Assembly: GCF_035084215.1 (NCBI RefSeq)
Contig: NW_027138407.1
Location: 1,178,001-1,242,000 of the forward strand
Direction: 5' to 3'
Source: Heptranchias perlo
Lineage: Eukaryota
DNA length: 64,000 nt
Shown here: in pieces, positions 24,492-32,916 of the stretch
Layout of the letters: each line of letters starts with the position of its first letter
How positions within the stretch are numbered: position 1 is the stretch's first letter
Notes under the pieces: generated by a model
Told to the model about the DNA's origin: nothing
What the model saw: only the letters and a program-made list of their open reading frames with translations
Database searches by the model: none
Translations under genes and position numbers: made by a program

Positions 24492-24967
24492 ATGGGAATC
24501 TTCCTTGTTTTCATCCTGTTTATCTGTTTGCCCCGTGAGTACCGTTCAACCAAACGGACAATGTGTGAATTTAAAACATAGCTGCCCGAGTCCATTGAAA
24601 TTGGAGACACGGTTTCTCTTTTAGCCCCGTTGTGTGGTTTGGCTCTGATGTCTCATCAAACTCTCTCTCTGTTTAATTTCCAGGCTCTTTCGGTCAGTCA
24701 GTGACACAGGACCCGAGAGCGGTGACCAAGAAGGAGTGTCAGTCTCTCACCATCACCTGCGCTTTCAAAGCGGGTGCTTCGTATCATTATTTCCAGAGTG
24801 GAGAATTCTTCAAACAAACTCAGAGCGGGACAGAGCGGAAGCGGATCGACGGCGGAGGACGATTTGCTGTGTCAACGAATAATGCAGAAAAGACATTTTC
24901 CCTGGAAATTAGGGATACGAGAGTTGAAGATAGCGCCACCTATTACTGTAAAGCAAAGTATGAAGAT
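24492..24967 (+). CDS. NARTCRV: NAR-TCR V (IgNAR-like) segment: leader 24492-24534, V exon 24684-24967
   Basis: MGIFLVFILFICLP/RSFGQSVTQDPRAVTKKECQSLTITC..IDGGGRF..EKTFSLEIRDTRVEDSATYYCKA; VNAR hallmarks (TK-E..SLTI-C, deleted CDR2 strands, I-.GGR, YYCKA) plus an extra FR1 Cys. Confidence 0.92.
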
Positions 24968-25005
24968 CACAGTGATAGGTCTCGACTGCCCGTGATACAA
25001 AAACT
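24968..25005 (+). other. 22-bp-spacer RSS of NAR-TCR V
   Basis: CACAGTG, 22 bp, ACAAAAACT. Confidence 0.93.
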
Positions 25006-25329
25006 CTCAATGCAGATTGACCGAGAAACAAATGAAAAAACGGAGTTAATCTGCGATTAAACCCAACAGATCCGCCTCTCACCTTCTGCCCCACAATCTA
25101 GTTAATAATGAGTTTGGATTATTGCAGTTAACATCTTGTGTTTTATAAATGGGGACTCTGTGCGGATGATGTCTTTCCTGGGATTGGTGTCAATGAACGG
25201 AGATTGGGAATGACTGATTCCCATTTACAAGTTTCAAACACCAGATGGGATCCTGTTCGAACAGTTGGAACCGAGATCCGCAATCCCAGCCGTTTAACTA
25301 ATGTGCCCAACATATCACCAAGCACCGGG

Positions 25330-25398
25330 GGATTTTATGCTGACTTGAAGTACTGTGTTTATGGGACAATCACAGTGGAAGAGTCCTCAGCAAATACC
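25330..25398 (+). other. NAR-TCR D segment (core 25358-25370 TTTATGGGACAAT) flanked by 12/12 RSS
   Basis: GGATTTTAT-12-TACTGTG [D] CACAGTG-12-GCAAATACC; open in all three frames (FMGQ, LWDN, YGT). Confidence 0.9.
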
Positions 25399-25722
25399 TC
25401 TGTACAATTAATATATCAATTCTCCTGGTCCGGATCCTGAATTGTAGGTTTGATGTCATTATCACTGTAATGTGGATTAATTTTATTGCAAGTTCCTGCT
25501 TTCAGTGATCTTTCTTTGACATTTTTCTCCGTTTATATTAAGCGCCCATCTCCGGCCCGTGCACCCGGGCCATTTTACAAAGAGCTGAGAGTCTCAGAAA
25601 GAAGAGTTTGAACCGACTGGGACTGTGAAACATGGAATATTTTTAATTGATCTAAAATCCCTGTAATAATTGGGCAGCGTGGACTCTACGGTGATGTGTG
25701 ACCAGCAGATTGAGGTGTCGGT

Positions 25723-25761
25723 GGTTCTTGTACAGGGGTGACTGAGAGCGGTGTCACGGTG
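25723..25761 (-). other. 23-RSS of NAR-TCR J
   Basis: Plus strand GGTTCTTGT, 23 bp, CACGGTG. Confidence 0.85.
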
Positions 25762-25838
25762 TTACTGTGGTGCTGGGTATAGACAAGGGGGATATTGTTA
25801 TTTGGATGGACCCGGGACAGTGGTGACCGTCACAGCCG
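25762..25838 (+). CDS. NAR-TCR J segment YCGAGYRQGGYCYLDGPGTVVTVTA
   Basis: IgNAR-like DGxGT-V-TV motif; phase-1 GTAAGT donor in frame with the supporting V exon. Confidence 0.9.
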
Positions 25839-26879
25839 GTAAGTGACTCCAAACCGCGCCGTGTTACAAACTGTCCAGGTTAATATTCAACTTCAATTTA
25901 TTATTGTGATCGGTATCACCTCAATCCCCTTCAACGTAAAACACAGCGGTTTTATAAGGGGACATTTCCATTGCAGTTTTCTATTGGGGACTAGAATATG
26001 AACCGGGGGAAGAGGTGTGAGAGCCCCACGGAACAGGCTTGACCCCATCTGGACCATCACTGGTTTAACGGGGGCTTTGGGGATCCCATGAACATCCCGG
26101 ACTCTTTCTCACTCTGATCCCCAGTAGGTGTTGTAAATGAGCACAGATTGTCGACACTCCGGCCTCTGCTCTCGGTGTGAACTGTAACTGAGGGAGCTCT
26201 GCCTGTCCCCGTGAACACGTGAGAGGCTACAGAGCTCTCTCCTGGGCAGCAGATTGCAGTCCGAGCTGGGCAGTGTGAATGAGGTACCGGTCGAGTAAAC
26301 CCAACACTACAGCGGCCCATCCGATAACTGCAGCGGCAGAAAAGCTGGAGCATAACACAGACAGAAGAGATCCGCTGTCGGTCGAGATGGCATTTCATGA
26401 TTGGACACCCAGTGATTGAAATTAATTGCATTTTAGCGAATATTTATTTCAATTCCCTTCAAATAAACAGTCATTTTTCTCCATGTTCCAGGTTTAAGTC
26501 GAAATTTGAAAGCCTCGAACTACAGACACTTTTCTATTTTTAATATCAGTGTTTGAGAGATCGGTTTGCATTAATTTACCTGGAGCCTTGGTTAATGTTC
26601 ATTGAAACAACATTGGGCAGTGAGAGAGTGAGTGCGAGGCGCAAATGTTCTTATAAAGGAGAACAGGAAGAACCGAGGGAACAAATACAGGCTGGAGAAA
26701 AGTCCATTTAGAACCACCAAGAAATAACTCACTGAAAGGGAGTGAAATATCGCCCATTGGGGGCAAGTGGGAATGTGGAGACACCGACCCCTGGGCCGTT
26801 CAAAGTACAATCCGGCACCGGTGGACTTAGATTTACCAGAGGGATGGGTTTCGATTGGGATCCGGTACTTTTCTCAGCT

Positions 26880-27390
26880 TTGCATTTCTTATACTCCTGA
26901 GAAAAGACATCAGCAGCAATCCACACCTATCTGGAAAGATTGAACAGGCCGGGGCTCTTTTCTCTGGAAAAGAGAAGAGTACGAAGAGACCTGATAAGAG
27001 GTCTTTAAAATTATGAAAATATTCGATAGGGTGGATGTGGAGAGGTCGTTTCCACTGGTGGGTGAGGCCAGAACAAGGGGCCAAAAATGTAACATAGTCG
27101 CTAACAGCTAAAATAAAGTATTAGCAGAAATGTATTTGCACAGAGAGCGATGAGAATGTGGAACGTGCTGCCACATTGAATAGTTGAAGCAGATAAGATT
27201 GACCCACTTAAGTTGAGGCATGATGTGTACATGAGGGAGAAAGGAATAGAGAGATAGCTGGGGAGAGAGGGTGGCGGGGTTCAGCGGGGAAGCCATAATT
27301 CGAGTTGGTGGAGGCTCTTTTGGAATATAAACACCGGCATAGACCAGCTGGGCCGAATGGCGTGTTTCTATTCTGCAGATTCTGTACAGT
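26880..27390 (+). mobile_element. CR1-type LINE 3' remnant
   Basis: LFSLEKRR..DLIEVFKIM-like sequence and CR1 3'UTR. Confidence 0.65.
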
Positions 27391-31069: not shown

Positions 31070-31410
31070 AATGGTTGAGGGGTTTAAGATAATTAAAGGA
31101 TTTGATAGGGTAGATAGAGAAAATCTAATTCCTCTGGTGGGGGAGTCCAGAACAAGAGGGCAAAACCTTAAAATTAGAGCCAGGCCGTTCAGGGGTGATG
31201 TCAGGGAGCACTTCATCACACAAATGGCAGTCGAAATCTAGACCTCTCTCCACGAAAAACTGTTGAGGCTGGGGGTCAATTGAAAATTTCAAAGCTGAGA
31301 TTGATAGATGTTGTTAGGCAAGGGTAATAAGGGTTACGGAACCAAGCGGGGAGATGGAGTTAAGATACAAATGAGCCATGATCTAATTGAATGGCGGATC
31401 AGCCTCGAGT
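31070..31410 (+). mobile_element. CR1-type LINE 3' remnant in the J-C intron
   Basis: Similar to 2400-2750. Confidence 0.7.
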
Positions 31411-31532
31411 GGCAGCTTTTCTTTAAATATGTGTGGACTATTATTTTATTGTCAGTCATTTATTGATGTATCGCTCTGTGCTCACATTGATGAATTCTGA
31501 ATAATTTACCCGTTCTGTTCTTCAATTTTCAG

Positions 31533-31853
31533 AGGACAAAACTCCAAAAGAGCCAACCGTGTCGGTCTTTTACCCGCCCGTGATTCAAAGACGGGACGGG
31601 GAGAGTACTGACACGGCGGCGGTATGTTTGGTATCGGAATTCTCTCCCAAAGAGATTGGGCTCTTCATGGATACAACCACTGTCCCAAAGACCGATGTCA
31701 CGAGATCCAGTCACTTATTAAACAACGGGTATTACAGGAGCTCGGGGTTCCTCTCTTTCAATTCATCCAAACATTCAGTAAATGTCACGTGTGAGGCAAA
31801 ACACAGGGCTCGATCTTTCTACGCAAAAAGCTACAGCCAGGTTTCTGCATCCG
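31533..31853 (+). CDS. TRDC: TCR delta constant region, Ig exon
   Basis: KDKTPKEPTVSVFYP..TAAVCLVSEFSPKEI..VTRSSHLLNNGYYRSSGFLSF..VNVTCEAKH; canonical phase-1 splice sites; matches my recollection of shark C-delta. Confidence 0.9.
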
Positions 31854-31879
31854 GTGAGTAATAAAATATTTCATGAATA

Positions 31880-32340
31880 AAGAACTTGAATTTATAAAGC
31901 GCCTTTTTGAGGTCTCGGGAATTCCCAAAGCGCTTTACAGCCAATGAAGTAGTGTTTGAAGTCTCGTCACTGCTGTAATGTAGGGTAATACAACAGCCAT
32001 TATGCGCACAGCGAGATCCCACAAACAAAGCAATGTGATAATGACCAGTTCATCTGTTCTTGTGACGTTCGTTCAGGGGTCAATATAGACCGGGGCACTG
32101 AGGAGAACACACTTGCTCTTCTTCGAAATACCATGGGGTCTTTCAGGTCCACCAGTGAGGGCAAACGGGGCCTCGGTTAAACATCTCATCCGAAAGACGG
32201 CACCTCCTATAGTGCAGCGCTCTCACAATGCTGGCACTGGCAGTGTCTGTCTGGATAATGGTCTCAAGTCTCTGGAGTGGGATTTTAACCCACAATCTTC
32301 TGATTCAGAAGCTAGATTGCTGCCAATGAGTCTTGGCATG
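31880..32340 (-). mobile_element. Deu-domain SINE
   Basis: Reverse complement of the 975-1425 family. Confidence 0.7.
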
Positions 32341-32516
32341 CTCAATTCTCCAAGTCCGACTGTAATTAATAAAACGGCTAAAGAATCAATACTACAGCTT
32401 TTTTACTACTTCCTCCATTACTACTGCTAATAACGATAACAATAAGTGATAGTAATGACAACAAAAGCAACAACAAAGTAACTTACTCAATAAAGCATTT
32501 AAATGTTTGTTCGCAG

Positions 32517-32588
32517 GCCCCGGCAGAAAGCCTGATTGTGGAAAACGTTCAAATAATTTCAGAGCAGGGACGAATGACGCCCAAACAG
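32517..32588 (+). CDS. TRDC: TCR delta connecting-peptide exon
   Basis: GPGRKPDCGKRSNNFRAGTNDAQT with the interchain Cys; AG/GT phase 1. Confidence 0.88.
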
Positions 32589-32806
32589 GTCAGTACCTTA
32601 TTTTAAATATGTTCAGGTAAAGGCAGAAAGACGGACAGAAATAGGGAGAGATAGATCGATACATGGACATAGATAGTTGTATAATAACCAGCCAGCTGGA
32701 TAGATGAGCAATACATTCCAATTTTGTGGTGCAGACATATTTATTTCAGTTAAATACAGTGGGTTTGTTTAACCAAATCAACGCTTTAATTTGATAATTG
32801 TTACAG

Positions 32807-32916
32807 ATCTACCGAGGGTGAATTTTCTGTCTTTGACAGTGTTAGGATTGAGAGTTCTCTTTTTTAAGAGCGTTGCCTTCAGTGTCCTGCTGACGGCCAG
32901 AGTGTGGTTATTTTAA
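32807..32916 (+). CDS. TRDC: TCR delta transmembrane exon
   Basis: DLPRVNFLSLTVLGLRVLFFKSVAFSVLLTARVWLF*; Arg and Lys CD3-contact residues of TCR alpha/delta; donor after the stop. Confidence 0.95.

What the first reader, a model, noticed from the sequence alone, without database searches (positions are those of the whole stretch)
24492..32916. Self-contained NAR-TCR mini-locus with an adjacent C-delta and no D between supporting V and J (TCR-mu-like organisation)
Seen: within 8.4 kb on one strand lie L, V(NAR), D, J, a leaderless V-delta, four J segments and C-delta (Ig, CP, TM), with all splice phases compatible. Only about 290 bp separate the supporting V RSS from the first J, and no RSS-flanked D is visible there. 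Known: in described shark loci, NAR-TCR cassettes (V-D-J plus supporting V-delta) sit in the V array, and the supporting V rearranges to shared D-delta/J-delta and C-delta. Platypus TCR-mu has a V-D-J-V-J-C cluster whose second V joins J without D. Inference: this is a dedicated double-V TCR-delta cluster, possibly using a second C-delta, that parallels TCR-mu architecture. No J-alpha array was seen in the 31 kb after C, as would be expected for the main C-delta.
Basis: partly seen in the sequence, partly recalled or inferred. Interest (0 to 1): 0.92.

Follow-up and report, generated by a model that had tools for sequence, protein, structure and literature searches.

The report
Shark NAR-TCR cluster with own C-delta
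A shark T-cell-receptor gene that carries an extra antibody-like domain sits here as a compact unit with its own joining segments and its own constant gene, an arrangement like the one monotremes and marsupials evolved separately for TCR-mu.

Summary
On the + strand, 24492-32916 carries a leader, a NAR-type V, one D, a long J, a leaderless supporting V-delta, four J-like segments (only J4 is canonical) and three C-delta exons. RSS types and splice phases all fit. No RSS-flanked D lies in the 293 bp between the supporting V and J1, or anywhere before J4. The supporting V (24-nt spacer) and J4 (13-nt spacer) can join directly under the 12/23 rule.

The C carries the delta signature CLxxxFxP. It is 91% and 83% identical to two other C-delta gene models of Heptranchias perlo, so this is not the only C-delta. 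Those three form one starred clade. Mustelus asterias has its own tight set of C-delta copies, five of them attached to NAR-V models. About 60 NAR-V/supporting-V models from other elasmobranchs stop at the supporting V.

Contigs of a probable RNA run end exactly at the NAR-J donor, the supporting-V acceptor and the J1 donor. No rearranged junction was seen, so D-less use and exclusive use of this C are inferred. First readers of this scan noted the same kind of cluster at four other places of this genome, and a D-J-C-delta/J-alpha block 373 kb away; I could not check these. This is a new variant of a known kind.

The parts
24462..24467 (+). TATA-like motif 25 bp upstream of the start codon (inferred promoter)
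   Evidence: Read directly from the sequence. Not tested.
24492..24534 (+). Leader exon, 43 nt, phase 1, GTGAGT donor
   Evidence: Hydrophobic leader MGIFLVFILFICLP, close to the leaders of the Mustelus and Cetorhinus NAR-TCR models.
24684..24967 (+). NAR-type V exon. It has a Cys in the a-b loop and F in place of the canonical Trp.
   Evidence: Pfam V-set 8e-10. The best full-length single-domain PDB matches are IgNAR V domains, e.g. 2ywy_A at 5e-17. It is 52-76% identical to the NAR-V part of gene models from 15 elasmobranch species.
24968..25005 (+). RSS of the NAR V: CACAGTG, 22-nt spacer, ACAAAAACT
25330..25398 (+). D segment (25358-25370, 13 nt) with a 12-spacer RSS on each side (25330-25357 and 25371-25398)
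25723..25761 (+). 23-spacer RSS of the NAR J (GGTTCTTGT-23-CACGGTG)
25762..25838 (+). Long NAR J, 77 nt, with two Cys, ending DGPGTVVTVTA; phase 1, GTAAGT donor
   Evidence: A contig with no mismatch covers 25735-25838 and stops exactly at the donor. P0023 of H. perlo has a similar long J.
28443..28753 (+). Supporting V-delta exon. It has no leader, an AG acceptor in phase with the NAR J, and a Cys in CDR1.
   Evidence: Pfam V-set 4e-16. It is 86% identical to the supporting V of P0023 and 57-78% to those of the NAR-V/supporting-V models of other species. Contigs begin exactly at 28442/3.
28754..28793 (+). RSS of the supporting V: CACAGTA, 24-nt spacer, ACAATAACC
29087..29151 (+). J1: FWNGD in place of FGxG, weak nonamer, GTAAGT donor
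   Evidence: A contig covering 28912-29151 stops exactly at this donor.
29271..29327 (+). J2 pseudogene: one-base frameshift inside the FGTG motif and no splice donor
29645..29700 (+). J3: FVSEA in place of FGxG, no recognisable RSS, GTAAGT donor
   Evidence: Its counterpart in P0023 still reads FRSGT.
29897..29987 (+). J4 with its RSS (GGTTTTACA-13-CACTGTG, 29897-29925). Coding part 29926-29987, FGDGTEVLVKP, phase 1, GTAAGT donor. This is the only canonical J.
31533..31853 (+). C-delta exon 1 (Ig domain, C1-set), with the motif CLVSEFSP
   Evidence: Pfam C1-set. 91% identical to XP_067833084 of H. perlo. The named relatives are 'T cell receptor delta constant' of rays and skates. The trdc signature CLxxxFxP comes from PMC10322711.
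32517..32588 (+). C-delta exon 2, the connecting peptide with the interchain Cys
   Evidence: It aligns with the same part of P0001.
32807..32916 (+). C-delta exon 3, the transmembrane segment with R and K five residues apart, then the stop codon
   Evidence: It is 63-89% identical to the transmembrane part of the other chondrichthyan delta chains.
32995..33000 (+). AATAAA, 79 bp after the stop codon (possible poly-A signal)
   Evidence: Not tested.

Best explanation
This is one copy of a duplicated, probably functional NAR-TCR gene cluster of a hexanchiform shark (Heptranchias perlo or a close relative). The cluster lies inside the TCR alpha/delta V array, in the opposite orientation to most neighbouring V genes.

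Proposed mechanism. Only the germline layout and the use of the splice sites are shown; the other steps are inferred.
1. RAG joins the NAR V (23-type RSS) to the D (12/12) and the D to the NAR J (23-type). This is the heavy-chain style of RSS layout.
2. Independently, RAG joins the leaderless supporting V-delta (24-nt spacer) directly to J4 (13-nt spacer), 1.1 kb downstream, with no D. The second V domain therefore gets only junctional diversity.
3. Transcription starts at the NAR V promoter.
4. Splicing runs leader -> NAR VDJ -> supporting VJ -> the cluster's own C-delta exons (Ig, connecting peptide, transmembrane). Every junction is in phase 1.
5. The product is a three-domain delta chain with the R/K transmembrane motif needed for CD3 assembly.

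The C-delta is a lineage-specific paralogue, not the single C-delta of the canonical D-J-C-delta/J-alpha block.
For: - Anatomy, RSS types and splice phases are as stated.
- The family marks listed in PMC1845163 are all present: Cys in the a-b loop and no Trp of WYRK in the NAR V; no leader and a CDR1 Cys in the supporting V.
- The NAR V is nearest to IgNAR V structures.
- The C meets the trdc signature and its named relatives are delta constants (PMC10322711).
- Three distinct Heptranchias C-delta sequences (window, P0001 at 91%, P0023 at 83%) form one clade with 98/97 support.
- P0023 is a gene model that runs NAR J - supporting V - J3-like - J4-like - C, so a second cluster has the same layout.
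- P0001 contains the same stretch upstream of J4 as the window.
- Contigs of run X1 match with no mismatch at 25735-25838 and 28750-28911. Contigs stop or start exactly at the NAR-J donor, the supporting-V acceptor and the J1 donor. The long introns are empty apart from repeats.
- No D and no other J array was found.
Against: - No rearranged supporting V-J4 joint and no full transcript was seen. The runs are short contigs whose RNA nature is a guess.
- Both spacers of the proposed V-J pair are one base longer than canonical.
- Three of the four J segments are decayed, which could mean the J-C part is in decline.
- The supporting-V contigs carry 4-5% mismatches, so they come from paralogues.
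- An intact same-strand V at 431-911 and inverted V genes nearby could share J4 and C, so exclusive use is not shown.
- The species is inferred only from the best protein match.
Confidence: 0.62

Rival explanations
1. The J4 and C-delta of this unit form a small general-purpose delta locus. Neighbouring conventional V genes use them as well, by deletion (the V at 431-911) or by inversion (the minus-strand V genes at 17.7, 46.3 and 55.5 kb). The NAR-TCR cassette is then only one of several users. This rival can be true together with the best explanation.
For: Intact V genes with consensus 23-RSS flank the unit. The 12/23 rule allows any of them to join J4. Mustelus has C-delta models attached to non-NAR V exons (P0025, P0027).
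Against: The repeated unit, as seen in P0023 and as described in the scan's unchecked notes, always contains the NAR cassette. The supporting V is by far the nearest partner of J4.
Confidence: 0.3
2. This is the classical arrangement in disguise. The supporting V normally rearranges to the shared D-delta and J-delta and uses the canonical C-delta far away. The local J segments and C would be a little-used or dying duplicate.
For: Three of the four local J segments are degenerate. Published nurse-shark accounts speak of two separate VDJ rearrangements (PMC1845163, PMC5931798). Two cDNA-like entries, P0054 and P0067, have long supporting-V junctions. An unchecked scan note places a D-J-C-delta block 373 kb away.
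Against: The cluster faces away from most of the V array, so reaching that block would probably need a large inversion. That inference rests on the unchecked note. J4, its RSS and all three C exons are intact. C exon 1 is covered by contigs. The same unit is kept in at least one other copy (P0023).
Confidence: 0.12
3. The whole unit is a non-functional duplicate that is transcribed only as sterile germline RNA.
For: The only exact-match contigs cover unrearranged DNA: the J with its RSS, and the V RSS through to J1. The J array is decayed, and both spacers of the V-J pair are off by one base.
Against: All eight coding exons are open with correct phases. The canonical Cys residues, the interchain Cys and the transmembrane R/K are kept. 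The heptamers and nonamers are good. Germline transcripts are expected of an accessible locus, so they do not count against function.
Confidence: 0.1
4. The extra C-delta copies result from an assembly artefact, that is, haplotigs or collapsed and expanded repeats.
For: The region is repeat-rich. The related models in Mustelus and Heptranchias sit on small unplaced contigs.
Against: The copies differ by 9-17% at the protein level, far more than alleles would. The window is continuous with no N. Independent contigs match cluster-specific non-coding stretches exactly.
Confidence: 0.03

Closest known systems
NAR-TCR (doubly rearranging TCR delta of cartilaginous fish; Criscitiello et al. 2006, as summarised in PMC1845163, PMC5931798 and PMC3149040)
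   Same: The unit has a leader, a NAR-type V with its own D and J, and then a leaderless supporting V-delta reached by splicing. It has the a-b loop Cys, no WYRK Trp, a CDR1 Cys in the supporting V, a delta constant region, and a position inside the TCR delta V array.
   Different: The held papers describe two separate VDJ rearrangements and a translocon TCR alpha/delta locus. Here the supporting V has no D before its J segments, and the cassette carries its own J set and its own C-delta paralogue. Gene models of the other elasmobranch species in the survey, apart from one long Cetorhinus model, stop at the supporting V, which fits the classical layout there.
Platypus TCR-mu clusters (V-D-J-V-J-C; Wang et al. 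2011, as summarised in PMC3457774 and PMC7615758)
   Same: Both are three-domain chains. Both have tandem clusters with their own C, a fully rearranging first V, a second V that joins J without D and so has little diversity, and a C derived from C-delta.
   Different: [quoted passage not shown] Here the first V is NAR-type, the C is a shark C-delta paralogue, and the cluster sits inside the V array. The likeness is convergent.
Shark immunoglobulin mini-clusters (V-D-D-J-C units repeated many times)
   Same: Both are small self-standing V-(D)-J-C units multiplied by duplication. The NAR part has the heavy-chain style RSS layout 23 / 12-12 / 23.
   Different: The constant region here is a membrane TCR delta, and the unit holds two V exons that are rearranged separately.

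Membership tests
NAR-TCR | The N-terminal V is related to IgNAR V. | tested here: met
   The best full-length single-domain PDB matches are IgNAR V domains at 5e-17 to 1e-11. It is 52-76% identical to the NAR-V part of gene models from other elasmobranchs.
NAR-TCR | The NAR V has a leader and an a-b loop Cys and lacks the Trp of WYRK (PMC1845163). | tested here: met
   Translation shows KKECQSL in the a-b loop and EFFKQ at the WYRK position. The leader exon is 24492-24534.
NAR-TCR | The NAR V has its own D and J with matching RSS. | tested here: met
   The layout is V 22/23, D 12 and 12, J 23.
NAR-TCR | The supporting V-delta has no leader, is entered by a splice acceptor in phase with the NAR J, and has a CDR1 Cys. 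| tested here: met
   There is an AG acceptor at 28441-28442 and both exons are in phase 1. GVCPY lies in CDR1. There is no hydrophobic ATG exon upstream. Contigs start at the acceptor.
NAR-TCR | The supporting V is completed by a VDJ rearrangement with D-delta. | tested here: not met
   There is no RSS-flanked D between the supporting V and J1-J4. The V 24-spacer RSS and the J4 13-spacer RSS are compatible for a direct join. Actual usage could not be tested.
NAR-TCR | The constant region is TCR delta. | tested here: met
   The motif CLVSEFSP fits the trdc signature CLxxxFxP (PMC10322711). The named relatives are 'T cell receptor delta constant'. The transmembrane R/K motif is present.
NAR-TCR | It is expressed as one three-domain chain. 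| tested here: inconclusive
   Contig ends coincide with the splice sites, but no contig spans two exons over a readable length and no rearranged joint was seen. The RNA nature of the runs is a guess.
TCR-mu | Cluster layout V-D-J-V-J-C with a D-less second V. | tested here: met
   compared with the description in PMC3457774.
TCR-mu | The C is C-mu and the V genes are VH-related (mammalian lineage). | tested here: not met
   The C groups with shark C-delta and the first V groups with IgNAR V. This unit is an analogue of TCR-mu, not a member.

The most novel reading that the evidence does not exclude
In at least two shark lineages (Hexanchiformes, and probably Mustelus among the Carcharhiniformes), NAR-TCR has left the shared translocon logic. 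It has become a multi-copy family of independent V-D-J-V-J-C clusters, each with its own C-delta and a nearly invariant, D-less supporting domain. That would be a separate receptor locus type, convergent in detail with mammalian TCR-mu.
Probability: 0.45. Interest if true: 0.75.

Novelty: new variant of a known kind. Interest (0 to 1): 0.6.

Why it matters
NAR-TCR and TCR-mu are the two known T-cell receptors that carry an unpaired, antibody-like extra domain. Until now the likeness has been described at the protein level.

If shark NAR-TCR also exists as duplicated clusters with their own constant gene and a supporting domain that has lost its D segment, then the same genomic solution arose twice, about 400 million years apart. 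The solution is to fix the supporting domain and keep diversity in the outer domain.

This would also show a TCR locus adopting the cluster organisation that sharks use for antibodies. It would give paralogue-specific C-delta sequences with which NAR-TCR cells could be followed separately from ordinary gamma-delta T cells.

Tried and rejected
- **C exon search by word index.** The search for homologous proteins with the C exon alone found nothing because of its length window. The exhaustive representative search solved this.
- **Genomic context of relatives.** I could not fetch the genomic context of P0001, P0023 or the Mustelus models, and I could not count C-delta copies on DNA.
- **Key papers not held.** Criscitiello 2006 and 2010, Deiss 2019 and Ott 2021 are not in the library. 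The supplement of PMC12227049 is not held. Prior description in those papers cannot be excluded.
- **PDB search with the C exon.** It returned only antibody light-chain constants, which says nothing on delta versus alpha.
- **PDB search with the supporting V.** It failed because I gave the wrong frame, and I did not repeat it.
- **Possible D relic.** Two heptamer-like motifs 2 nt apart at 28935-28950 have nonamers matching only 3-4 of 9 positions. I treat this as chance.
- **Supporting-V tail as a germline V-D fusion.** I considered that the long 3' tail of the supporting V might be such a fusion. A similar tail (CALSRRT) ends the supporting V in nearly all species surveyed, so it is a family trait.
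- **Joined exons.** I searched the spliced model exon by exon and left the joined step out.

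
Full report
**What is there**

Reading 24000-33500, scanning for recombination signals and translating by coordinates give one co-oriented series on the + strand:

| Element | Coordinates | Notes |
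|---|---|---|
| Leader exon | 24492-24534 | phase 1 |
| NAR-type V exon | 24684-24967 | RSS CACAGTG-22-ACAAAAACT |
| D | 25358-25370 | 13 nt, between two 12-spacer signals |
| NAR J | 25762-25838 | 77 nt, 23-spacer signal, GTAAGT donor |
| Intron | 25839-28442 | 2.6 kb |
| Supporting V-delta | 28443-28753 | starts at an AG acceptor, no leader; RSS CACAGTA-24-ACAATAACC |
| J1-J4 | 29087-29987 | four J-like segments |
| C exon 1 (Ig) | 31533-31853 | |
| C exon 2 (connecting peptide) | 32517-32588 | |
| C exon 3 (transmembrane) | 32807-32916 | ends with the stop codon |

Every exon junction is in phase 1, so the reading frame runs from the leader to the stop. Pfam finds V-set in both V exons and C1-set in the C exon.

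**The J array**

Only J4 (29926-29987) is canonical. It has FGDGT, a GTAAGT donor and the signal GGTTTTACA-13-CACTGTG. J1 reads FWNGD and has a poor nonamer. J2 has a one-base frameshift and no donor. J3 reads FVSEA and has no recognisable signal.

**No D for the second V**

The supporting-V signal ends at 28793 and J1 starts at 29087, a gap of 293 bp. A relaxed scan of 28700-30000 found no + strand signal other than that of the V, so no segment is flanked on both sides. A pair of heptamer-like motifs at 28935-28950 has no credible nonamers, and I treat it as chance. The V (24-nt spacer) and J4 (13-nt spacer) satisfy the 12/23 rule for a direct join, although each spacer is one base longer than canonical.

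**Identity of the parts**

- The first V has the marks that PMC1845163 lists for NAR-TcR V: a leader, a Cys in the a-b loop, and no Trp in the WYRK motif.
- Its best full-length single-domain matches among solved structures are IgNAR V domains.
- The second V has the marks of a supporting V-delta: no leader and a Cys in CDR1.
- The C exon carries CLVSEFSP, which fits the trdc signature CLxxxFxP used in PMC10322711.
- An exhaustive protein search found 20 relatives of the C exon. Those with informative names are 'T cell receptor delta constant' of Hypanus and Leucoraja.
- The transmembrane exon has the R and K five residues apart that are typical of alpha and delta chains.

**Source organism**

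The best match of the C exon is XP_067833084 of Heptranchias perlo at 91%. The next species is at 55%. The window therefore comes from that species or a close hexanchiform relative. This is an inference from a single protein match.

**This is not the only C-delta**

A search with the C part of that protein found a second Heptranchias model, P0023, on the same 1.7 Mb contig.

- P0023 runs NAR J - supporting V - a J3-like J - the stretch upstream of a J4-like J - C. This is the same layout as the window.
- P0001 contains the same stretch upstream of J4.
- In the Ig domain, the window's C is 91% identical to P0001 and 83% to P0023.
- The three form one clade with 98/97 support.
- The six Mustelus asterias C-delta sequences in that tree are close to one another, although the fork joining them is not resolved.

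The copies therefore arose, or are homogenised, within lineages. There is no sign of an old NAR-specific C lineage shared by sharks. I could not include the canonical C-delta of Heptranchias, because I had no access to the rest of the genome.

**How widespread is the layout**

A search with the double-V part of a Mustelus model returned 74 proteins, which I compared with the window's exons.

- About 60 models from Carcharodon, Cetorhinus, Heterodontus, two Scyliorhinus species, Stegostoma, Hemiscyllium, Chiloscyllium, Rhincodon, Pristiophorus, Pristis and Amblyraja hold a NAR V and a supporting V. They stop at the germline end of the supporting V (typically CALSRRT followed by the heptamer).
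- Only five Mustelus asterias models, P0023 of Heptranchias and one long Cetorhinus model run on to a C-delta.

Gene models are weak evidence for distance. Still, the pattern fits a classical cassette without its own C in most species and a different layout in Heptranchias and Mustelus, which belong to the two main shark clades.

Two unnamed cDNA-like entries, P0054 and P0067, show long junctions between supporting V and J. That is what D usage would give.

**Transcription**

One sample has three small runs of uncertain type. Laid on 25700-31699, the contigs gave the following:

- They cover 25735-25838 with no mismatch and stop exactly at the NAR-J donor.
- They start exactly at the supporting-V acceptor, with 4-5% mismatch, so these contigs come from paralogues.
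- They cover 28750-28911 with no mismatch.
- They cover 28912-29151 and stop exactly at the J1 donor.
- They cover part of C exon 1.
- The long introns are empty apart from repeats.

This pattern indicates RNA and use of the predicted splice sites. The exact-match pieces are germline (unrearranged) transcripts. No supporting V-J4 joint was seen. Contigs drop diverse junctions, so this absence says nothing.

**Surroundings**

- The other V genes of the window are mostly on the minus strand: intact at 17.7, 46.3 and 55.5 kb, and damaged at 3.3, 14.6, 15.9 and 56.9 kb.
- One intact V with a leader and a perfect 23-signal lies on the + strand at 431-911.
- The cluster is thus nested in the V array and inverted relative to most of it.
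- No J array lies in the 31 kb after the C on either strand.

Notes by first readers of this scan, which I could not check, report similar clusters 11 kb before the window and 45, 139 and 187 kb after it. They also report a D-J-C-delta unit next to a J-alpha array 373 kb before the window.

**Reading**

The best explanation is a duplicated NAR-TCR cluster that completes its second V by a direct V-J join and uses its own C-delta. What is shown is the germline anatomy, the extra C-delta copies and the use of the splice sites. What is inferred is the D-less junction in mature chains and use of the local C in cis.

Three things are not excluded:
- that neighbouring V genes share J4 and this C;
- that the supporting V sometimes reaches the distant D-J-C block;
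- that this copy is in decline.

**Comparison with what is known**

The held literature describes NAR-TCR as part of a translocon TCR delta locus with two separate VDJ rearrangements (PMC1845163, PMC5931798, PMC6795676, PMC12227049). No held paper mentions NAR-TCR clusters with their own C-delta. The primary papers on the nurse shark locus were not available, so prior description cannot be ruled out.

The layout matches that of platypus TCR-mu, whose second V also lacks D (PMC3457774). The V and C families differ, so the likeness is convergent.

**Limits**

- The spliced product was searched exon by exon, and the joined step was left out.

Noticed in passing
window 4447-5370, minus strand: A tandem array of about ten 60-63 bp units. 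Each unit carries a heptamer CACAGTG and a nonamer close to ACAAAAACC, 22-24 nt apart, which makes a run of RSS-like sites inside an antigen-receptor V array. It could be a satellite derived from an RSS and a possible off-target site for RAG.
   Followed up: partly
window 25762-25838: The NAR J is unusually long (77 nt) and encodes two Cys before the DGPGT motif. P0023 of H. perlo has a similar long, Cys-bearing J. This could be a germline D-J fusion or a built-in disulphide loop in CDR3.
   Followed up: partly
window 431-911, + strand: An intact conventional V with a leader and a perfect CACAGTG-23-ACAAAAACC signal. It is the only other + strand V in the window, 24 kb upstream of the cluster, and could join J4 by deletion.
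   Followed up: partly
window 3236-3523, 14544-14741, 15832-16116 and 56864-56956, minus strand: V pseudogenes or damaged V genes. They show frameshifts, loss of the first Cys and of the Trp, or truncation.
   Followed up: partly
P0004 (Scyliorhinus canicula) and P0025 (Mustelus asterias): Gene models that link a V exon (VH-like in P0004) through a Cys-rich stretch (SCYGIK.C) and a J to C-delta. They may reflect Ig-like V cassettes with germline-joined D/J near C-delta copies.
   Followed up: no
window 26900-27500, 28100-28300 and 30100-31500: The introns of the cluster hold interspersed repeats that reach very high contig depth in the runs laid, so these are expressed or abundant transposon families.
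   Followed up: no
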